Below, piece after piece: positions 4,650-14,973 of a DNA stretch of 64,000 nucleotides. Positions within the stretch are counted from its first letter, which is position 1. Each line of letters opens with the position of its first letter. The position numbers and the translations under genes are program-made. The notes under the pieces are model-generated. The model had not been told where the DNA came from. It did no database searches and was given only the letters and a program-made list of their open reading frames with translations. The stretch is taken from positions 1 through 64,000 of the IMG/VR virus record IMGVR_UViG_3300044846_005229; one strand, written 5' to 3'.

Positions 4650-6017
4650 TTAGACTCCTTCATAATACATATTGATATACTTACGTGCGTTCTGATTGCT
4701 GACTTTCTCCCATACCCCCCTTCTAAATGATTCTGCCGAATGTTGAATGCCGAATGTTGCTATATCTTTAGCCTCACTCTTCGTCAGTCCGTCTTTTTCC
4801 ATTTCTGTCATCACTTTATTGAAATTCCTTTCCAACACATCAGCTTGTTTGCCTGTCGGGTAATTTGTCATCGCGAAGTTAGTCCCTGTCCATCCACCTA
4901 AAGCTTCAGATAAGGCTGCTTTCCAGTTTTTCTGAGATAACCCCAAATCAACAAACCTGGCCACCCCCTTATCATCAATAATTAAATTATCGCCCTTAGC
5001 ATCATTGTGGGCATACCCTAGTTTATGCAATTTTCCCATAGTGATATTGTAAGCGTCATCTTTGTCAATGCCATTGATCTTTTGAGGGGCCTTGTAAAGG
5101 GGGACTCCTGGAACAACTTCCATAGCAATCATACCTTTGTGGATGGTACCGTTATCCATGTTGCTATGGGCATTCTTTACGAATCTGGAGGCTATTAATT
5201 TGGGGCCCAAACCGACTTCCCCCAGTTTTTTAATTAAGGTAGCCTCAGTTCTACCGATATCCCCAACCTTAACGCCAATTTCATTAGGCATTCCATCCGA
5301 GTATCCAAGTAACTTCTTCGTGGGTATCTTCAGGAATGCTCCATAGCCCCCTGCACCCAATACCCGGGAGCCTGATCCTTCAACTGCGCTCCACTTTACC
5401 TTATCTGCTTTCTCTGAGCCATCAATGCTTATAGTGCCTTCGGGGCCTAGCCTTTTCATTTTGTCTAATAACTTACTGGCGGCTTCTCTGACTTTTCTTA
5501 CCTTATCTGCAGGGATATCACCATTCTTATGGGTAGTCATTGGGGCTGAGGGCCGAGTCCGTGCCACAGTTTCTTTAGGGGTCTTAGGAACTGGTTGATT
5601 CTTTAGTTTCTTGGCAGCATTTATTCTGCCTATAAGGGTGCGAAACCTTTGAATGGCTTGGCCAAAAAATAGTCCCAAGTTGTGTTCTTTGTCTTGAGTT
5701 TGCTTATTTATTGGTGGTGAATTCTTTCCCGTAGGGGGGTTCTTAATTGGGGGATTTTGGACAGGGGTAAAGGCAACTGGTTTGGTAACACCAAAAATCC
5801 TGTCCCTTACTTTTATCAGAGAACCCACAACAACATCAGGCAACTCGATAAGACAAGTCTTCACCCCTTCGATACAAGTTGCTGAGCAGCTTTTACCGAT
5901 AGAGCACCTTTTACGACCACCCCCGACAGCATTTGATTTGGACTTCAGAATCTCAGAACTCGATGGCGCATTGCCGGAGGGTGCCGCAAAGTTGAATTGT
6001 CCTTCACCATTTACCAC
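4650..6017 (-). CDS. Cys4-module protein with C-terminal protein-kinase-like domain (kinase 1)
   Basis: N-terminal CSIGKSCSATCIEGVKTC; kinase motifs GAGGYG (Gly loop), GVKVG (Lys), HNDAKGDN (catalytic loop), FVDLG (DFG-like). Confidence 0.75.
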   Translation of the reverse strand: MVNGEGQFNFAAPSGNAPSSSEILKSKSNAVGGGRKRCSIGKSCSATCIEGVKTCLIELPDVVVGSLIKVRDRIFGVTKPVAFTPVQNPPIKNPPTGKNSPPINKQTQDKEHNLGLFFGQAIQRFRTLIGRINAAKKLKNQPVPKTPKETVARTRPSAPMTTHKNGDIPADKVRKVREAASKLLDKMKRLGPEGTISIDGSEKADKVKWSAVEGSGSRVLGAGGYGAFLKIPTKKLLGYSDGMPNEIGVKVGDIGRTEATLIKKLGEVGLGPKLIASRFVKNAHSNMDNGTIHKGMIAMEVVPGVPLYKAPQKINGIDKDDAYNITMGKLHKLGYAHNDAKGDNLIIDDKGVARFVDLGLSQKNWKAALSEALGGWTGTNFAMTNYPTGKQADVLERNFNKVMTEMEKDGLTKSEAKDIATFGIQHSAESFRRGVWEKVSNQNARKYINMYYEGV

Positions 6018-6026
6018 GCGGTGCCT

Positions 6027-6206
6027 TTAACCCAGATATTGCCAAGCAGTGACTACATCCTCAGATACCAACCCATCAATATCCATCTTTTGAGCAGCGT
6101 CTAGGGCCCTAAGGGATTCAACCCGCTTGGCAGGGTCTCTGCGTAACTTTTTGTAACGCTCCATGAGCTTTTGGTATTTGTCGTCGTTGCTTAGTTGAGA
6201 TGCCAT
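6027..6206 (-). CDS. Small helical protein (59 aa), paralogue of 50001..50168
   Basis: Hand-translated MASQLSNDDKYQKLMERYKKLRRDPAKRVE...; below ORF-track cutoff; shares KYQKLM..YK..RRDPA with the 55-aa ORF at 50001..50168. Confidence 0.65.
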   Translation of the reverse strand: MASQLSNDDKYQKLMERYKKLRRDPAKRVESLRALDAAQKMDIDGLVSEDVVTAWQYLG

Positions 6207-6281
6207 TTGTTATGGGGGAGTTTTGAGTTATCAGGCTGTTAAGCCGCATACACCTATTATACCCCGTGGTCGCTGCCTTTG

Positions 6282-6407
6282 TCAACCTTCCTCTCGGTCT
6301 TCTTCGGATTTGATGAAATCCTTAAGGTCTTTGACATATACGCGAAGATCTTGGGCCTTTTGAAGATGCCAATGTTGTTTAGTTTTCAAGTAAAGCATCA
6401 TGTGGTT
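6282..6407 (-). pseudogene. 3' part of a 67-aa conserved cyanophage-type hypothetical gene interrupted by the IS605 element
   Basis: NHMMLYLKTKQHWHLQKAQDLRVYVKDLKDFIKSEEDREEG*; joins in frame with 7976..8053 when the IS is removed. Confidence 0.8.
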
Positions 6408-6600
6408 TTGACTTCCTCCCCGCCGTGAACGGCGGAGATTCCTTCTACGCTGCGCATGGGGATGCCTCAGCGATCGGGTGGGTTGGCGCTTCACAGCCTG
6501 CTGCCACCAAAGCGGTGGACTGATGCGTGGCTCCACGCCCGTTTCGACCCTCCGCCAGTCCGGCGGCGAGAATGTTCAAGGCAGCGTTGATGTCACGGTC
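6408..6600 (-). ncRNA. Predicted TnpB omegaRNA/reRNA scaffold (3' of tnpB to right end; guide is the flank AACCACATGATGCTTT...)
   Basis: Established for IS605 TnpB systems that the RNA overlaps the tnpB 3' end and right end; hairpins visible; 5' boundary is a guess. Confidence 0.55.
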
Positions 6601-7653
6601 GTGGACCGTTCCGCAGCTCGGGCACTGCCACTCCCGAATCGAAAGATCCTTCTTGCCGTCGTGATGCCCGCAGGTTGAGCACACCTGGCTGGTGGGGGGC
6701 CATCGGTTGATGACCACCACTTCACGCCCGTACTGCTCAGCCTTGGACTCCAGCAGGATCCGCAGCTGACGCCAGCCTGCATCGGCAATCGAGCGGGCCA
6801 GCTTCCTGTTCTTCAGCATCCCCGACACATTCAGGTCTTCCAGCACCACCGTTTGGTTCTCACGGATGAGGCGGGTCGAAAGCTGATGCTGATAGTCGAG
6901 GCGCCGATCGCCAACCTTGGCGTGCAGCTTGGCCACCTTGCGCCTGGCGATTACCAAGCGGTTGGAACCCCGTTGCTTGTGCTTCAGGTTGCGCTGTAGC
7001 CGCCGCAGTCGCTTGAGCGCAGAGCGCAGGAACTTCGGCGGGGCGAGCTTTTCACCGTCAGAAGTGACGGCGAGGGATACCAAGCCTAGGTCGATGCCAA
7101 CCGCCCTGCCATTCGCTGGCAAAGGAGTCGGCTCAATATCCACAACGAAGCTGGCGAAGAATCGCCCACTTGCATCGCGGATGACGGTGACGCTGCTCGG
7201 ATCCGAAGGCAGATCCCGGCTCCACTCAATCGGCACCGGGCCGATCTTGCTGAGCGTCAGCGTCCTCCCCCCTGTGCGGAACACATGGGACATGAAGCAA
7301 ACGGACTGCGCACCACGGCGCTTTTTGAAGCGTGGCGGCTTGACCTTCGCGCCCTTGCGCTTGCCTTTCAGGCTGGCCCACCAGTTGCGGTACGCCTGAT
7401 CGAGGTTGCGCACGGACTGCTGCAGCACCACATTGCTGGGCTCCGCCAGCCACTGCCGCTCTGGCGTCTGCTTGGCCTGCGTGATGCAGAGCTTGGCCAG
7501 GACGGGGTAGCTGGTCTTTTGCCCAGCGGCATACAGCTCACGGCTCTTGGCCAGGGCGTCGTTCCATACCACACGGGCGCAGCCGAACGCACGAGCCAGC
7601 GCCACCTGCTGATGCGGGTGGGGGTAGAGCCGGAAGCGGTAGCGTTGCTTCAT
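6445..7653 (-). CDS. tnpB: RNA-guided endonuclease TnpB
   Basis: MKQRYRFRLYP HTH start; RuvC-I GIDLG, RuvC-II VVLEDLNV, zinc finger CSTC/CPSC, RuvC-III HDRDINAA; all catalytic residues present. Confidence 0.95.
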   Translation of the reverse strand: MKQRYRFRLYPHPHQQVALARAFGCARVVWNDALAKSRELYAAGQKTSYPVLAKLCITQAKQTPERQWLAEPSNVVLQQSVRNLDQAYRNWWASLKGKRKGAKVKPPRFKKRRGAQSVCFMSHVFRTGGRTLTLSKIGPVPIEWSRDLPSDPSSVTVIRDASGRFFASFVVDIEPTPLPANGRAVGIDLGLVSLAVTSDGEKLAPPKFLRSALKRLRRLQRNLKHKQRGSNRLVIARRKVAKLHAKVGDRRLDYQHQLSTRLIRENQTVVLEDLNVSGMLKNRKLARSIADAGWRQLRILLESKAEQYGREVVVINRWPPTSQVCSTCGHHDGKKDLSIREWQCPSCGTVHDRDINAALNILAAGLAEGRNGRGATHQSTALVAAGCEAPTHPIAEASPCAA

Positions 7654-7682
7654 ACCAACCACCATACCAAACTTGGGGTGCA

Positions 7683-7949
7683 ATGGCGCAACCACCGCTT
7701 AGGCGAGGAAGGCACAGCGTTTCTCGGCTTGTCGTTCATTTGGTCTTTGTGGTCAAGTATCGGCGCAAGGCGCTGAGCGGGGCGGCATTGGATCGGATGC
7801 ACGAGGTCTGCCTGGGCATTGCCGAGCGGATGGGCTTCCAGCTGCTTGAGCTGAACGGCGAAGCAGACCATGTGCATCTGCTGGCGGGGCGCCCATCGAG
7901 CGTCTCAGGGAGTATGTGGAGTCTCAGGAAAAGCCGTCCTCAAGGACGG
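7683..7949 (+). pseudogene. tnpA: IS200-type Y1 transposase remnant (internal deletion plus frameshift)
   Basis: N-terminal ...HLVFVVKYRR...ADHVHLL (HUH) fused at ~7882/7883 to an out-of-frame C-terminal GGAPIERLREYVESQ (catalytic Tyr helix); the central part is missing. Confidence 0.85.
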
Positions 7950-7975
7950 GGTTTGTGTCCCAGAACAGCCCCGTT

Positions 7976-8053
7976 ATCAATGGCTTTAAGCAAGCTATGA
8001 ATTACTGGGTTCCACGGGCCCCTTATTGGGTTATCCCATTCTCTTTTTGACAT
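7976..8053 (-). pseudogene. 5' part of the IS-interrupted hypothetical gene
   Basis: MSKREWDNPIRGPWNPVIHSLLKAID, ending exactly at the TTGAT target. Confidence 0.8.
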
Positions 8054-8079
8054 TTGACCTACCTACTATTCTATGGGCA

Positions 8080-8811
8080 TCACTTAATAACATTGAGACT
8101 TCTATTGAAGTACATCCTGCGGTCTTCCAACCCATTATAACCACCATTTACTCTGCGGGTAACTTGTTCTACGGTGGGATTCTTATCACATAGGGCATTC
8201 ATCCCATTGTTAAACCACCAAAAACCTGCCGAGGAAAATGGATACTTATCAGCTACATAATTAGCCCCTTGCATAACTTGTGGATCTTTGATAAAATTGG
8301 CAAAGTCCTGATAGTTTGCTCTACCTGTAAGCTGAATGTAACCGGCACCTTTGAAGCGGGGGCCATCCCCCGGTTGGGTATTTCCCAGATCTTTCCTACC
8401 TTCGTAATCCCAACCCGAAGCCAACTCTTTCTTCCAGCGACCACCACCAGATTCATGCGCAGTTTGACTAAGGAAATGACGAATTCTTTGCGGAGTTGTG
8501 ATTGCAAATTCTTCTAGACATCTATTAAGTTCGGTTACTTCAGAATCTAAAATCAAGCTTGGGGCACATTGCCAAATATATGCCAGAGACTCTTTGGAAA
8601 CATACTGCTTTGGGGTTGGTGGCCTAGTGGGAGTTGGTGGTTTGTAGGGTGTACGATATTTCCTTACCCAACTAGCCTCATCTGTAAATAGTTCGGGTTG
8701 TTTAGCAAAAACCGCCTTGGCAAAATCCAAAAAGGCACTTTCTTGAAGGGGGTTGTCTGTTCTACGGTTATTGACAAAATCTAAGAATTTCTCTGCAGTG
8801 AATTGGGGCAT
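8080..8811 (-). CDS. Endolysin, glycoside hydrolase family 19 (chitinase-like lysozyme)
   Basis: [41 protein letters not shown] motifs; likely start MPQF at 8811. Confidence 0.88.
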
Positions 8812-9563: not shown

Positions 9564-9773
9564 CTACCGAATTTCCAAAATTTTACCCTCTAGTTCCTCT
9601 ATGTAGTCTAATAGGGCCGTGGTCTGAGCCGATAGCTTTATTAGTAGACAAGAACTTTCAACAAGGTATTCTTCCAGCTCTTGTCTGGATAGAAGATTAA
9701 TTTTTTCCCTAATTTTGAAAGGAATTAGTTCCTTTTCTAGGGGTAATTCAATTTGTGGCCTTTGGAAGTCCAT
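9564..9773 (-). CDS. NblA-like small helical protein (possible phycobilisome degradation factor)
   Basis: 69 aa; ELPLEKE...LSRQELEEYLVE pattern resembles NblA (L.LEQ.F...MS.EQ...L.E); divergent. Confidence 0.4.
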   Translation of the reverse strand: MDFQRPQIELPLEKELIPFKIREKINLLSRQELEEYLVESSCLLIKLSAQTTALLDYIEELEGKILEIR

Positions 9774-10428
9774 GGGCTATTTGTTTAAGGGATTGAAATT
9801 TTTCTGATGCCCAGTGGTGTTGGTCTTCCCCCATGACTGCCTCACTGATGTAATCAACCATGAGATCCATCTCTTCGTCTGACAATACACTGAAAGCTTC
9901 AGCTAGATCATCTGATAAGAGCAGCGTCCGAGCCTCATCTGGGCTATAAACAAAGTCGGTATCTACCCAGTCTTCAGGTTGAGAGTCATAGGAGATGTGG
10001 TAGTTGTTTTCTGATAGTTGGCATTCCAGGACTCTAGCCTCGTCAATGTTTAACTTTTTGGCTATGTCGGTGTAGCTCATGTTTTCCTGTAAAAGCCCTA
10101 GGACCTCATTGCGATACTTGGCGATCCATCGGGGGGTTTTCACAAGCCTGGAATAATCTCGAAGAGCATGTTGGATGTATCCTCGGGCATTTTTCCAGGC
10201 GTAGGTGCTGAATTTAACGTGTTTGTCAGGGTCAAACCTGGTAGCAGCTACGCAAAGAGCAAAGTTTGCTATGGACTCTAGATCCTCCCTAGTGAGAGAA
10301 CCTGTATTGCCACCTGTTAAACACTTGGCTCCAAAAGCTAATCGACCAGCAATCCAGCTATGCTCTTCGACTAGTTTCTTTTGGTCTCTGGATAGTCCAG
10401 GGTACGATTTGTACCTCTTTTTTGTCAT
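9748..10428 (-). CDS. Phage RNA polymerase sigma-70-family factor (sigma A of window)
   Basis: Region 2 EDLESIANFALCVAATRFDPDKHVKFSTYAWKNARGYIQHALRD; HTH SYTDIAKKLNIDEARV. Confidence 0.85.
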   Translation of the reverse strand: MTKKRYKSYPGLSRDQKKLVEEHSWIAGRLAFGAKCLTGGNTGSLTREDLESIANFALCVAATRFDPDKHVKFSTYAWKNARGYIQHALRDYSRLVKTPRWIAKYRNEVLGLLQENMSYTDIAKKLNIDEARVLECQLSENNYHISYDSQPEDWVDTDFVYSPDEARTLLLSDDLAEAFSVLSDEEMDLMVDYISEAVMGEDQHHWASEKFQSLKQIAHGLPKATN

Positions 10429-10431
10429 GGG

Positions 10432-12372
10432 TTAAGCCTCGCAAGCTGTGCAATCTGTGTATTCTGGGGTGGTTTCTGTGGGCAGATTAAACTTTAAGAC
10501 ACTGTTTTCTTCTTTGTACTGCATGTACTCGGTATAGCCCCCGATGTGCTTATCGTAAAGCCATAATTGAGGGACGGTTTTCCAGTCGTGGTTCCAGTAA
10601 CCCTTGTCAATAGCCTCTTGTTTGTCCATCTCTTTATAAGTAATACCACAGCGGTAGAGTTCTTGTTTCAGGCTGTCGCACCAAGGGCACCCTTCCTTGG
10701 TAACGATGAGAGCTGGGGCTTTCTTTTTCTTCGTTAGAAGAGAACTCGACTTAAGGTAATAAAGAGATTTGAGACCCATTTTCCAAGCAGACAGGTGAAG
10801 ACGCATAATATAATCTGCATCAGCTTCGGGGTCAACAAACAGGTTTAGGGATTGCCCTTGGCAAATAAAGGGTTGACGATCAGCGGCTTGTTTCACAAGC
10901 TCAAACTGATCAACTTCCCGAGCTGTCTTAAACACCTCTTTTTCCTTGTCCGTCAAGCAAGCAAGTCCTTGAACACTGCCCCTGGCTTCCAGAATCTCGT
11001 CCCACACTTCTGGCCCAACCCCTTTTTTACAAAGTAGGCTCTCAAGAATAGGGTTCTTCCGAACATATGAACCTTTGGCTTGCTTCGCTACGAAATAGTT
11101 CGAGGCAATGGGTTCAATTCCTTCCGACCCCGCTCCGCAAATAACACTATTTGTTTTTGTTGGAGCAACGGCTAACAAATGTGTATGGCGCTTCCCACTA
11201 CCGACACACCACTCAGGTTCCCCCAGCTTGACTGCCAGCTCCCTTGAAGCAGTTTCGGCCTCTTGGAGGATCCATTTGTGAACCTGGGTATTAAGTTCCC
11301 TGGCTTCTTGGGACTTAAAGGGTAAGCCTCTTTTCTGATAGAGGGTATGCAGGCCCATGACCCCTAAGCCCAATGCACGAGACTTCTCAGCGAAACGGAC
11401 CGAACGGCCCATCCCCACTTTGTCCTTAGCCTTGCGAATGAACTCGGAAACAACGGATTCTAGAAGGTGGACAGCAATCTGAGGCACTGAGCGGCCAGAA
11501 ACAGGGGAGCGCCAATCCTTAAACTCGTCGTATTTCGATAAGTTAAGAGAGGAAAGGACACAAACAAAGGAATGGTTTTCGTCGGTATGAAGAAACACTT
11601 CGGAACACAAATTACTCGTCTTCACTGTCAGCCCTCTCTCAACGTAACAGGCAGGGTTCTGATTGTTGGCGTTGTCAATGAAGATAAGGTAAGGGCTACC
11701 TGAAATCATTCTTGTCTTGAGTACCTCTCCAAAAAGCTCTTGTTTTTCCTTGTTACCTGCGATCATGGATTCTATCCATTCGTCTGTGATCGTTAGGGCT
11801 ATGTTACTGTCAATTTTTTGACGAGAGTCCCCGTTAGCATGATCTTTTGCTCTAAGGATTTCTGGCACGTCGGGGTGTGATATGGGCAGATACATCGCAA
11901 AGGATCCGCGACGAACACCCCCTTGGGAGACAACTGAAGCGCATAAGTCGTATTGCCTAGCCCAAGGGACTATGCCTGTAGACTTTCCACCGCCAGAAAT
12001 TGGAGTTCCTGCGGGCCTCACATCCCCAAAGTACACACCAACTCCTCCACCATTCTTACTCAAAGAAGCCACCTCCTTTAGATGGGAATAGATCGAGGAT
12101 ATACTATCGGTAAGATGTATAGAAAAACAACTTATAGGTTGCCCACGATTGGTACCAAAGTTGGAACAAACTGGACTTGCAGGTCCGATAAAACCATTCC
12201 ACAAACAGTGAAAGAGATCTTCTTCTAGGGTCGGATCTTGATTGAGTTTGGCTGCTGTTGAGGACAATCTCGTCATCATATCACGAGGTGTCTCACCAGG
12301 TAGTAAGTACCCTGCAGACAATGTGTGCAAAGCCTCTTCAGACATCCATTCGGGGTGAGGTGTATTGGTCAT
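10432..12372 (-). CDS. nrdA: Ribonucleotide reductase class Ia alpha subunit with fused glutaredoxin domain
   Basis: PISCF, NLCSE, VCVLSS, YYLKS catalytic motifs; then Grx domain (CPWC...TVPQ...IGGY) and terminal CTACEA. Confidence 0.93.
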   Translation of the reverse strand: MTNTPHPEWMSEEALHTLSAGYLLPGETPRDMMTRLSSTAAKLNQDPTLEEDLFHCLWNGFIGPASPVCSNFGTNRGQPISCFSIHLTDSISSIYSHLKEVASLSKNGGGVGVYFGDVRPAGTPISGGGKSTGIVPWARQYDLCASVVSQGGVRRGSFAMYLPISHPDVPEILRAKDHANGDSRQKIDSNIALTITDEWIESMIAGNKEKQELFGEVLKTRMISGSPYLIFIDNANNQNPACYVERGLTVKTSNLCSEVFLHTDENHSFVCVLSSLNLSKYDEFKDWRSPVSGRSVPQIAVHLLESVVSEFIRKAKDKVGMGRSVRFAEKSRALGLGVMGLHTLYQKRGLPFKSQEARELNTQVHKWILQEAETASRELAVKLGEPEWCVGSGKRHTHLLAVAPTKTNSVICGAGSEGIEPIASNYFVAKQAKGSYVRKNPILESLLCKKGVGPEVWDEILEARGSVQGLACLTDKEKEVFKTAREVDQFELVKQAADRQPFICQGQSLNLFVDPEADADYIMRLHLSAWKMGLKSLYYLKSSSLLTKKKKAPALIVTKEGCPWCDSLKQELYRCGITYKEMDKQEAIDKGYWNHDWKTVPQLWLYDKHIGGYTEYMQYKEENSVLKFNLPTETTPEYTDCTACEA

Positions 12373-14395: not shown

Positions 14396-14582
14396 TTCTT
14401 CCGATAGAGAAATTTGTTGTGATTTTTACTTGTGGATTAGGAAACGTCCAGCAATCCCCATTACCGTCTAAAAAGACTACCCAGAGGAGATCATGTTCCT
14501 GTGAGTAGTCAATAAGGAAGTGAGCCCAACCCTTACCTTTAGGTGTTTCCATAGGCAACGCAGGGTTAAGTTGTAAAATCAC
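14343..14582 (-). CDS. Conserved phage hypothetical protein
   Basis: LQLNP.LP.ETPKG.GWAHFLIDYSQEHDL.WVVF pattern. Confidence 0.55.
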   Translation of the reverse strand: MILQLNPALPMETPKGKGWAHFLIDYSQEHDLLWVVFLDGNGDCWTFPNPQVKITTNFSIGRNDVLNNDPGSSVRECPR

Positions 14583-14725
14583 TTACCTTGCCCGCGATAT
14601 TTCTTTTTAGGGTTTGGGTTAGCAGAGGTTGCAGAGAATTTCGTTCTTTTTGAGTTTCCCTGGTATGTCTTCTTTTCAGAGGGGACGATTTCCCGTTGAT
14701 TGGTTAGTGATTTGACTTTTGCCAT
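14579..14725 (-). CDS. Small basic cyanophage protein (48 aa)
   Basis: Hand-translated MAKVKSLTNQ...KKTYQGNSKRTKFSATSANPNPKKKYRGQGK; stop overlaps next GTG. Confidence 0.6.
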   Translation of the reverse strand: MAKVKSLTNQREIVPSEKKTYQGNSKRTKFSATSANPNPKKKYRGQGK

Positions 14726-14769
14726 TTTGAGTTGGTATTAGTTTGATTTGGTATGCGTCTAGGTGGAAA

Positions 14770-14973
14770 TCACCAAATACCGGGAATAATTTGCCCAGTA
14801 ACAGCATAAGAGCCAAGAGCTGCGATAATTCCAATCATAGCCAATCTCCCATTTAGGGCTTCACCGGCCTTATCCCACGCAACCATTGGCCTATAGCCTT
14901 CATCAACTAGGGTCATTTCGGGTTCGATGGCAAAATGGTTAAGGACACCTTGGTCGTCTTTTGTGGTTGTCAT
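14770..14973 (-). CDS. hli: High-light-inducible protein
   Basis: Chlorophyll-binding motif EALNGRLAMIG and C-terminal TGQIIPGIW. Confidence 0.93.
   Translation of the reverse strand: MTTTKDDQGVLNHFAIEPEMTLVDEGYRPMVAWDKAGEALNGRLAMIGIIAALGSYAVTGQIIPGIW

What the first reader, a model, noticed from the sequence alone, without database searches (positions are those of the whole stretch)
6388..7653. Intact TnpB programmed against the IS-free allele of this phage gene
TnpB keeps all three RuvC acidic residues and the zinc finger. By established TnpB biology its guide is the right-end flank (AACCACATGATGCTTTAC...) and its TAM is TTGAT, so it would cut the empty allele. In a phage this would act as an RNA-guided homing endonuclease against co-infecting relatives even though tnpA is dead. 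The phage-competition role is inference.
Basis: partly seen in the sequence, partly recalled or inferred. Interest (0 to 1): 0.6.

Follow-up and report, generated by a model that had tools for sequence, protein, structure and literature searches.

The report
Host IS605 element with TnpB in cyanophage
A 1.6-kb jumping gene from freshwater picocyanobacteria sits inside a small gene of a 279-kb cyanophage; its transposase is broken but its RNA-guided nuclease (TnpB) is intact and, by its layout, aimed at the uninterrupted version of that gene, which is the normal design of this transposon family and not a new kind of system.

Summary
Window 6408-7975 is a 1568-bp IS200/IS605-family element on the minus strand, at 62% GC in a 45% GC phage.

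- **Insertion:** it lies exactly 3' of TTGAT, with no target duplication, and splits a conserved 67-aa phage ORF.
- **TnpB:** 402 aa, E 2e-71 to ISDra2 TnpB. It keeps D188/E272/D354 and both CxxC pairs.
- **Guide RNA:** the last ~160 nt form an omegaRNA-like structure with covariation.
- **tnpA:** dead, through a 163-nt deletion plus a frameshift.
- **Empty alleles:** four related phage contigs carry the uninterrupted gene. One has the exact TAM and target, two read TCGAT, and one has four target mismatches.
- **Other phage copies:** the same IS lineage sits at a second site in a sister phage and at a third site in an unrelated phage. Each has its own tnpA loss and an intact tnpB.
- **Source:** multi-copy elements in Prochlorococcaceae MAGs, about 83% nt identical.

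The guide and TAM reading is therefore correct, but every IS605 TnpB is built this way. TnpB homologs occur in 406 of 50,697 phage records, and a 2026 review already names homing into co-infecting phages as a theoretical case. Nuclease activity and phage-to-phage homing remain untested. Verdict: a new member of a known kind, and a good natural test bed.

The parts
6408..7975 (-). Whole IS200/IS605-family element (1568 bp), a non-autonomous derivative of a ~1731-bp host element
   Evidence: IS-free alleles in L004/L005/L006/L007 join window 6407 to 7976. Contigs of two more runs show a joint that skips 1568 bp. GC is 0.59-0.66 against 0.40-0.50 in the flanks. Host copies of 1731 bp share both ends.
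7976..7980 (-). TAM / target pentanucleotide TTGAT, phage DNA abutting the left end
   Evidence: It is retained in the IS-free allele L007. The left-end flank in 17 family copies reads TTGAT x6, CTGAT x9, GTGAT x1 and TTGAC x1.
7934..7949 (-). Left-end subterminal hairpin (CCGTCC-TTGA-GGACGG)
   Evidence: Found in the DNA fold and the stem-loop scan. Conserved in host copies.
7683..7873 (+). tnpA remnant: N-terminal half with the HUH motif (HVHLL). The 163-nt deletion junction follows at about 7873/7874, then a frameshifted tail.
   Evidence: Pfam Y1_Tnp positions 1-63 of 121 only. Alignment to 1731-bp host copies and three-frame translation place the deletion and frameshift.
6445..7653 (-). 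tnpB CDS (402 aa plus stop; alternative start ATG at 7665), RNA-guided RuvC nuclease
   Evidence: Pfam domains. E 2e-71 to ISDra2 TnpB with the D/E/D triad and both CxxC pairs kept. dN/dS is about 0.14.
6408..6570 (-). Predicted omegaRNA scaffold, overlapping the last ~40 codons of tnpB and the right end. It includes the right-end hairpin at 6417-6438.
   Evidence: Consensus structure on 34 copies: 98.9% of cells paired, 7 pairs with compensatory changes, 0 of 500 shuffles as high, slid controls 37-53% paired. Synonymous rate collapses in the last 62 codons. Weak Rfam HgcC match at 6395-6567, 24 bits, E 0.007, below the gathering score.
6388..6407 (-). Guide template / target: phage sequence directly after the right end (begins AACCACATGATGC)
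   Evidence: The right end ...GGAGGAAGTCAA is invariant and the flank is different in every copy. The same 26 nt follow TTGAT in the IS-free allele L007.
7976..8053 (-). 5' part (codons 1-26) of the split 67-aa phage ORF
   Evidence: It reads in frame with the 3' part once the IS is removed. The intact ORF is present in L004-L007 and is 49-51% identical in L008-L018.
6282..6407 (-). 3' part (codons 27-67 plus stop) of the split phage ORF
14485..14512 (-). IS-free allele of a second insertion site: TTGAC at 14508-14512, followed by the 23 nt that the sister phage's IS copy has as its right-end flank
   Evidence: L026/L006 right-end junction against window.

Best explanation
Window 6408-7975 is a non-autonomous IS605-group insertion sequence. 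It came from the phage's picocyanobacterial host pool. A Y1 transposase inserted it 3' of TTGAT into a small conserved phage gene.

Its own tnpA is now dead. Its tnpB and the structured right-end RNA (omegaRNA) are intact and under purifying selection.

By the family's established design, the omegaRNA runs out of the right end into phage sequence. TnpB is therefore directed to TTGAT followed by AACCACATGATGC..., a junction that exists only in genomes lacking the IS. The IS-bearing genome is spared because the right end (GTCAA) is not a TAM.

In an infected cell the expected effect is a double-strand break in any IS-free copy of the locus. Such a copy could arise by excision through a host TnpA supplied in trans, or could belong to a co-infecting relative. 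Repair from an IS-bearing genome would then copy the element in. This is selfish retention or homing, with competitor damage as a possible by-product.

Shown: identity, boundaries, TAM, guide position, intact catalytic motifs, RNA structure conservation, dead tnpA and natural IS-free alleles. Inferred: omegaRNA expression, cleavage, and homing.
For: - **Boundaries and scarless insertion:**
- **TnpB homology and motifs:**
- **TAM consensus and right-end behaviour:** YTGAT at the left flank, invariant right end with unique flanks.
- **omegaRNA:** covariation and loss of synonymous change over the overlap (dS 0.02-0.2 against 0.6-0.7).
- **Purifying selection:** dN/dS is 0.14-0.15 between phage-borne copies (33-35 synonymous against 16 nonsynonymous differences).
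- **Repeated tnpA loss:** three phage-borne copies form their own clade (99/98 support). Each lost tnpA through a different deletion while tnpB stayed open.
- **Specificity:** TAM plus guide has no other match in the complete phage genome or in four host MAGs.
- **Susceptible target:** an exact natural allele exists (L007).
- **Mechanism in print:** PMC10055086 and PMC10690162.
Against: - There is no direct evidence of expression. The only RNA-library data are assembled contigs of the sister phage, and these may be DNA carry-over.
- No tnpB promoter was found by the simple scan. The left-end hairpin with its T-run could stop read-through from the upstream phage gene.
- Some natural TnpBs are inactive; HpyTnpB was inactive in PMC10055086.
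- Three of the four known IS-free alleles have a TAM or target change.
- Only one IS+ haplotype is known at this site, so no co-conversion signal could be looked for.
- The window and sister-phage copies differ by 6 synonymous and 8 nonsynonymous changes, too few to show selection on that short branch.
Confidence: 0.6

Rival explanations
1. Passive passenger. The IS dropped into the phage genome during replication in an IS-rich host and knocked out a dispensable small gene. It simply hitch-hikes. TnpB is intact only because the event is recent, or because selection acted while the lineage was still in hosts, and it does nothing measurable in the phage.
For: The IS is still at host GC, 62% against 45%, so it has not ameliorated. 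The same pattern of tnpA broken and tnpB open is seen in about 20 host copies, so it needs no phage-specific selection. TnpB homologs are frequent in phages, in 406 of 50,697 records. No expression evidence exists.
Against: Three phage-borne copies form a clade apart from all sampled host copies. Between them dN/dS is 0.14-0.15. Three independent deletions all hit tnpA and none hit the 2.8-fold longer tnpB.
Confidence: 0.3
2. Domesticated phage weapon or regulator. The TnpB-omegaRNA pair is kept for the phage's benefit. It would destroy co-infecting relatives too diverged for repair (interference competition), or bind DNA as a repressor.
For: The sister phage's copy has lost its left end and TAM, so it can never be excised. 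The only possible targets of its TnpB are other genomes. The two sister phages are reciprocally IS-free at each other's site.
Against: The catalytic triad is intact, so it is not a TldR-like repressor. The guide is still just the insertion flank and is not retargeted. The reciprocal targets carry a TAM change (TTGAC) or a mismatch at guide position 8, so present-day cutting is doubtful. No fitness data exist.
Confidence: 0.08
3. Assembly chimera: a host IS was mis-joined into a phage contig.
For: There is a sharp GC step at both ends. The material is metagenomic.
Against: Identical junctions occur in two IMG/VR contigs, in an 8165-nt contig of run X1 and in a junction-spanning contig of run X12. 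The insertion is exact, after TTGAT, restores an open frame when removed, and has no duplication. The nearest host copy is only ~83% identical.
Confidence: 0.02

Closest known systems
ISDra2 of Deinococcus radiodurans (TnpA + TnpB; TnpB structures 8bf8/8exa/8h1j)
   Same: TnpB aligns end to end (E 2e-71) with the same D/E/D triad and zinc finger. It has the same TAM (TTGAT), the same insertion 3' of the TAM without duplication, and an omegaRNA at the right end.
   Different: Here tnpA is divergent from tnpB and broken. The element lives in a virulent-type jumbo cyanophage genome rather than a chromosome. Activity is untested.
[quoted passage not shown]
   Same: TnpA and TnpB share a TAM, and TnpB targets the scarless donor joint. 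Many non-autonomous copies are mobilised in trans. Related strains lacking the insertion supply the donor-joint sequence, as the IS-free phage contigs do here.
   Different: The 'sister chromosome' here would be another phage genome in the replicating pool or a co-infecting relative. No TnpA is encoded in cis.
'Transposon non-restorative homing' (review PMC13565253, Table 1)
   Same: The review lists 'coinfected phages/plasmids' as targets.
   Different: The review cites plasmid evidence and treats phages as a theoretical case. This locus is a candidate natural example, not a demonstration.
tnpB of cyanophage A-1(L) (bioRxiv 10.64898/2026.02.14.705889) and other phage-borne tnpB genes
   Same: A host-derived tnpB sits in a freshwater cyanophage and is absent from close relatives. 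In A-1(L) it is transcribed during infection.
   Different: The A-1(L) copy is identical to host copies. Here the phage copies are ~83% identical to the nearest sampled host copy and form their own clade. Here the IS-free alleles, TAM and guide are also defined.
Free-standing and intron homing endonucleases of phages (T4 SegF/SegB; PhiPA3 gp210, PMC11620839)
   Same: The proposed outcome is the same: cutting of the nuclease-free allele in co-infection, with gene conversion or competitor damage.
   Different: Those recognise the target by protein. Here recognition would be by a transposon-encoded RNA, and self is distinguished from non-self by presence of the IS.

Membership tests
IS200/IS605 family (IS605 group) | Y1 HUH transposase gene (tnpA) present | tested here: met
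   Pfam Y1_Tnp at E 5e-15 on the plus-strand ORF from 7683, with the HUH motif HVHLL.
IS200/IS605 family (IS605 group) | tnpA intact (HUH and catalytic Tyr in one frame), i.e. an autonomous element | tested here: not met
   Only profile positions 1-63 of 121 match. A 163-nt deletion and frameshift remove the rest. The element is therefore filed as a non-autonomous derivative.
IS200/IS605 family (IS605 group) | No terminal inverted repeats; subterminal hairpins at both ends | tested here: met
   Left-end hairpin at 7934-7949 and right-end hairpin at 6417-6438. The ends AACGGGG... and ...AGTCAA are not inverted copies of each other.
IS200/IS605 family (IS605 group) | Insertion 3' of a fixed pentanucleotide, without target-site duplication | tested here: met
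   Four IS-free alleles. YTGAT lies before the left end in 16 of 17 copies.
TnpB RNA-guided nucleases (ISDra2-like) | Full-length homology to solved TnpB, with the RuvC D-E-D triad and CxxC...CxxC zinc finger | tested here: met
   E 2e-71 over residues 5-375. D188, E272, D354, C325/C328 and C344/C347 are kept.
TnpB RNA-guided nucleases (ISDra2-like) | Structured omegaRNA encoded over the tnpB 3' end and right end, running into the flank | tested here: met
   Covariation in 7 pairs, 98.9% of cells paired, controls far lower. dS collapses in the overlap. Weak HgcC hit. This is structure only; the terminal helix is also the DNA hairpin used by TnpA.
TnpB RNA-guided nucleases (ISDra2-like) | omegaRNA expressed, and TAM-dependent RNA-guided DNA cleavage | not testable with these tools
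   Only assembled contigs of RNA libraries were available. They concern the sister phage and cannot show transcription.
Homing endonuclease behaviour (transposon non-restorative homing) | A natural nuclease-free allele with an intact recognition site exists | tested here: met
   L007/L002 has TTGAT plus at least 26 identical nt. L004/L005 read TCGAT, and L006 has 4 mismatches.
Homing endonuclease behaviour (transposon non-restorative homing) | Spread of the element into diverged backgrounds, with co-conversion of flanks | tested here: inconclusive
   Only one IS+ haplotype is known at this site (G000 and G001 are identical). Nothing more came from the metagenome scan.
Homing endonuclease behaviour (transposon non-restorative homing) | IS+ and IS-free phages meet in the same cells or samples | tested here: inconclusive
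   DNA runs X1 and X12 show IS+ only. RNA-library runs X15 and X16 show the sister phage with this site empty. Contigs drop minor variants, and the sample names are coded.
TldR-type nuclease-dead TnpB repressors | Loss of RuvC catalytic residues; guide retargeted to a promoter | tested here: not met
   The catalytic triad is intact. The guide is the insertion flank. This family is rejected.

The most novel reading that the evidence does not exclude
In this group of ~280-kb freshwater cyanophages, the TnpB-omegaRNA module would be kept by selection as a TnpA-independent gene drive or interference weapon between co-infecting phages. The TAM and seed variants seen in the IS-free alleles would then be escape alleles of an ongoing arms race. 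These variants are TCGAT in two contigs, TTGAC at the sister phage's site, and a position-8 mismatch. On this reading, two sister phages each carry an IS aimed at the other's empty site.
Probability: 0.2. Interest if true: 0.75.

Novelty: new member of a known kind. Interest (0 to 1): 0.4.

Why it matters
TnpB is the ancestor of Cas12, and its natural role has been shown only in bacterial chromosomes and plasmids. Phage-to-phage homing is so far a theoretical entry in a review table.

This locus offers what a test of that idea needs:
- an exactly defined IS, TAM and guide;
- a complete IS+ phage genome;
- natural IS-free alleles with perfect, TAM-variant and seed-variant targets;
- a sister phage with a second, immobilised copy.

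It also links an uncultured jumbo cyanophage to freshwater Prochlorococcaceae hosts through the origin of the IS. If nothing more is found, it remains an ordinary IS605 insertion in a phage.

Tried and rejected
- **Rfam:** it gave only a sub-threshold HgcC match (24 bits against a gathering score of 50) and a chance-level sot0042 hit. No curated omegaRNA family was matched.
- **DNA search of deposited phages:** no close relative of the locus, only endolysin-level similarity.
- **L006 record:** The genome search did not hold it. The second-site copy was recovered through the search for related loci instead.
- **Second site in other relatives:** the region has no counterpart in L004, L005 or L007, so the window's allele is the only IS-free one known there.
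- **Scans for more alleles of the first site:** the metagenome-contig scan returned only two contigs already in hand. The viral-contig scan returned only the five known ones.
- **Search for an intact tnpA in four host MAGs:** it found mostly C-terminal halves. The best candidate also looks damaged at both ends, so the source of active TnpA is not identified.
- **Possible host or second phage target:** TAM plus guide has no match with up to 3 mismatches in four host MAGs. In the complete phage genome the only match is the right-end junction itself.
- **L029 flanks:** they have no DNA similarity to the window's phage, so no IS-free allele of the third site is available.
- **Literature tools:** one search was badly posed and returned irrelevant papers. 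Two paper-reading runs failed on term syntax.
- **Assembly chimera and TldR-like repressor readings:** both rejected, as set out under the rival explanations and the membership test.

Full report
**What is there**

The window is part of an IMG/VR virus contig. A second contig of 279,339 bp is identical over the region. It has direct terminal repeats and is rated 100% complete, and it shares the window's coordinates. GC content jumps from about 0.40-0.50 to 0.59-0.66 between about 6400 and 8000.

Inside that block the minus strand carries a 402-aa ORF. Pfam finds HTH_OrfB_IS605, OrfB_IS605 and the Cas12f1-like TNB zinc ribbon in it. The plus strand carries a short ORF that matches only the first half of the Y1_Tnp profile.

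**Exact boundaries**

On the minus strand the sequence reads ...GCCATTGAT | AACGGGGCTG ... GGAGGAAGTCAA | AACCACATGATGC.... Four related phage contigs (L004, L005, L006, L007/L002) are 93-97% identical in the flanks and lack the block. They join window 7976 directly to 6407. Contigs from two further public runs show the same joint, 'skips 1568'.

The element is therefore window 6408-7975, 1568 bp. It is inserted 3' of TTGAT with no target duplication.

Removing it restores a 67-aa ORF, split between Asp26 and Asn27. That ORF is intact in the four relatives and recognisable at 49-51% identity in ten more distant phage contigs. It has no Pfam match.

**The nuclease**

The ORF aligns over residues 5-375 with ISDra2 TnpB (8bf8/8exa/8h1j, E 2e-71). 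The three RuvC acidic residues are D188, E272 and D354. The two CxxC pairs are at 325/328 and 344/347. All are kept. The start is ATG 7653 or, perhaps more likely, ATG 7665, which host copies conserve.

**The guide RNA**

- The last ~160 nt of the element (about 6408-6570, minus strand) fold into a conserved multi-helix structure.
- On 34 family copies, 98.9% of cells pair and seven pairs show compensatory changes. No shuffle out of 500 reaches these values, and slid controls pair at 37-53%.
- The terminal helix doubles as the DNA hairpin used by the transposase. Helices inside the tnpB coding region covary too.
- Independently, synonymous divergence collapses in the last 62 codons of tnpB (dS 0.02-0.2 against 0.6-0.7 upstream), as expected for an overlapping functional RNA.
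- Rfam gives only a weak match to HgcC (24 bits, E 0.007, below threshold). From memory, HgcC is an archaeal RNA associated with tnpB 3' ends. This is a lead, not a test.

**TAM and guide**

Across 17 copies whose left end could be located, the five bases before it are TTGAT (6 copies), CTGAT (9), GTGAT (1) and TTGAC (1, in a decayed copy). The right end ...GGAGGAAGTCAA is invariant and is followed by a different sequence in every copy.

That is the IS605 design described for ISDra2 and the Geobacillus elements. TnpA and TnpB share the left-flank TAM, and the omegaRNA reads out of the right end (PMC10055086).

The IS-bearing genome itself is not a target, because GTCAA rather than a TAM precedes the guide-matching bases. 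With up to three mismatches, there is no other match to TAM plus guide in the complete phage genome or in four host MAGs.

**tnpA is dead, but the element may still be movable**

Host copies of full length are 1731 bp. The phage copy has a 163-nt internal deletion at about 7873/7874. The deletion keeps the HUH half and throws the C-terminal segment out of frame. That segment (..IERLREYVESQEKP) includes the Tyr that I take, from knowledge of the family, to be catalytic. Both end hairpins are intact, so a TnpA supplied in trans could still act on it.

About ten 1731-bp host copies examined also have stops or frameshifts in tnpA, several of them shared. Their tnpB is open in 19 of 21 copies. In four host MAGs nearly all Y1_Tnp matches cover only the C-terminal half, and the best candidate also looks damaged. 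I did not find the active TnpA.

**Origin and spread**

- The nearest cellular copies are 84-87% identical in protein and about 83% in DNA. They are multi-copy in freshwater Prochlorococcaceae MAGs and in the cyanobacterial MAG UBA5018.
- Three copies lie in low-GC phage DNA (flanks 0.44-0.47 GC).
- The first is this one.
- The second is 98.7% identical and sits at a second site in a sister phage (L026/L006).
- The third is 96% identical and sits at a third site, after TTGAT, in a phage with no DNA similarity to this one (L029).
- In a tnpB tree these three form a clade (99/98 support) apart from all 20 host copies.
- Each has lost tnpA differently: an internal deletion here; loss of the first 222 nt of the IS plus about 450 bp of phage DNA in the sister phage, at a short shared ACCACAAAGAC-like stretch; and complete removal in L029.
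- None has a lesion in tnpB. dN/dS between L029 and the other two is 0.14-0.15.

This pattern fits selection to keep tnpB and the omegaRNA, but host copies show the same bias, so it is not specific to phages.

**The targets in nature**

Of the four IS-free alleles at this site:
- L007 has the exact TAM and at least 26 nt of target.
- L004 and L005 read TCGAT, a synonymous change at the T that is invariant across the family's flanks.
- L006, the sister phage, has TTGAT but mismatches at guide positions 8, 15, 19 and 21.

Conversely, the sister phage's IS copy has as its flank the 23 nt found in the window at 14485-14507, where the preceding pentamer is TTGAC. The two phages are thus reciprocally IS-free at each other's site, and each potential target carries a TAM or seed difference.

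With so few alleles, and flank divergence of 3-6%, this is compatible with chance. I record it as an observation only.

**Reads**

Fourteen lake-water runs hold at least half of the sampled words of window 5900-8500. Only assembled contigs were available.
- DNA runs X1 and X12 show the IS+ allele, with junctions spanned.
- Two metatranscriptome-library runs (X15, X16) contain contigs of the sister phage, with this site empty and the IS at the second site.

These confirm both arrangements independently. They cannot show transcription or minor alleles.

**How it most likely works**

The element is an ordinary IS605-group transposon in a non-autonomous state. The TnpB-omegaRNA complex, if made, cuts TTGAT-flanked IS-free copies of the locus. 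Recombination with IS-bearing genomes in the replicating pool then reinstalls the element. This would apply after excision by a host TnpA, and in principle to co-infecting IS-free relatives.

The first half is the demonstrated function of the family (PMC10055086; PMC10690162). The second is listed as 'transposon non-restorative homing' with 'coinfected phages/plasmids' as targets in a 2026 review, with plasmid evidence only (PMC13565253).

I put about 0.6 on the nuclease being functional in this selfish sense, 0.3 on a passive passenger, and less than 0.1 on domestication as a phage weapon or regulator.

**Novelty**

TnpB homologs occur in 406 of 50,697 deposited phage records. They have been noted in several cyanophages, and in A-1(L) one is transcribed during infection (10.64898/2026.02.14.705889).

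The locus is a new member of a known kind. Its value is as a well-defined natural system for testing TnpB homing between phages, and as a host link for an uncultured jumbo cyanophage.

Noticed in passing
window 14485-14512 (minus); L026:3868-5260; L006:1-660: A sister phage (IMGVR_UViG_3300027763_000031) carries a 98.7% identical IS copy at a second site. It has lost IS nt 1-222 and about 450 bp of phage DNA (window 14508-14959) at a short shared ACCACAAAGAC-like stretch. That copy can no longer be excised but keeps tnpB and the right end. The window's allele of that site reads TTGAC followed by 23 nt identical to that copy's flank.
   Followed up: yes
L004 and L005 around position 6940; L006 around 6936: Two IS-free relatives have TCGAT instead of TTGAT, a synonymous Ile codon change. 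It is the only difference within the 90 nt shown around the site. The sister phage has four differences in the first 21 target bases. These could be escape variants or chance.
   Followed up: partly
L029:3926-5246: A third phage-borne copy (96% identical) lies in a phage unrelated at the DNA level (flank GC 0.44-0.46). It consists of the left end plus tnpB only, with tnpA entirely gone. It is inserted after TTGAT.
   Followed up: partly
L036, L041, L044-L047, L049, L050, L055, L060 (left ~500 nt of each IS copy): All the 1731-bp host copies examined have stops or frameshifts in tnpA, several of them shared between copies at different loci. Their tnpB is open. This suggests the family multiplied after tnpA had already failed.
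   Followed up: partly
L030:5268-5385: One viral-contig copy has two right ends 58 nt apart, that is, a tandem duplicate of the terminal hairpin and the GTCAA end.
   Followed up: no
window 6256-6285 (minus): A perfect sigma-70-type promoter match (TTGACA, 18 nt, TATAAT; 12 of 12) lies just after the stop of the split small ORF and ahead of the 59-aa ORF at 6027-6206.
   Followed up: no
window 6401-6425 (minus): The right end supplies GGAGG 13 nt before two in-frame ATG codons of the split ORF (..NHMM..). The C-terminal 39-40 residues might therefore still be translated from the IS-bearing allele.
   Followed up: no
window 14770-14973 (minus): A 67-aa ORF has a weak chlorophyll a/b-binding match (E 0.009, below cut-off), resembling a high-light-inducible protein. 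It is part of the DNA deleted in the sister phage.
   Followed up: partly
window 10432-12372 (minus) and 9748-10428 (minus): A ribonucleotide reductase large subunit with a C-terminal glutaredoxin domain is fused in one ORF. It is followed by a 226-aa protein with sigma-70 region 2.
   Followed up: partly
window 4650-6017 (minus): A 455-aa ORF has a weak protein-kinase match (E 4e-4, below cut-off).
   Followed up: no
L038, L044 (CALRTY02 contigs): A MAG labelled Chitinophaga pinensis carries copies of this cyanobacterial IS at 86-87% protein identity. They sit among the Prochlorococcaceae copies in the tree. The bin is probably mislabelled or mixed.
   Followed up: no
window 6917-7399 and 7285-7776 (plus): Long antisense ORFs (160 and 163 aa) lie inside tnpB. 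They are probably a by-product of high GC. A preprint on phage A-1(L) claims a protein from the reverse strand of its tnpB.
   Followed up: no
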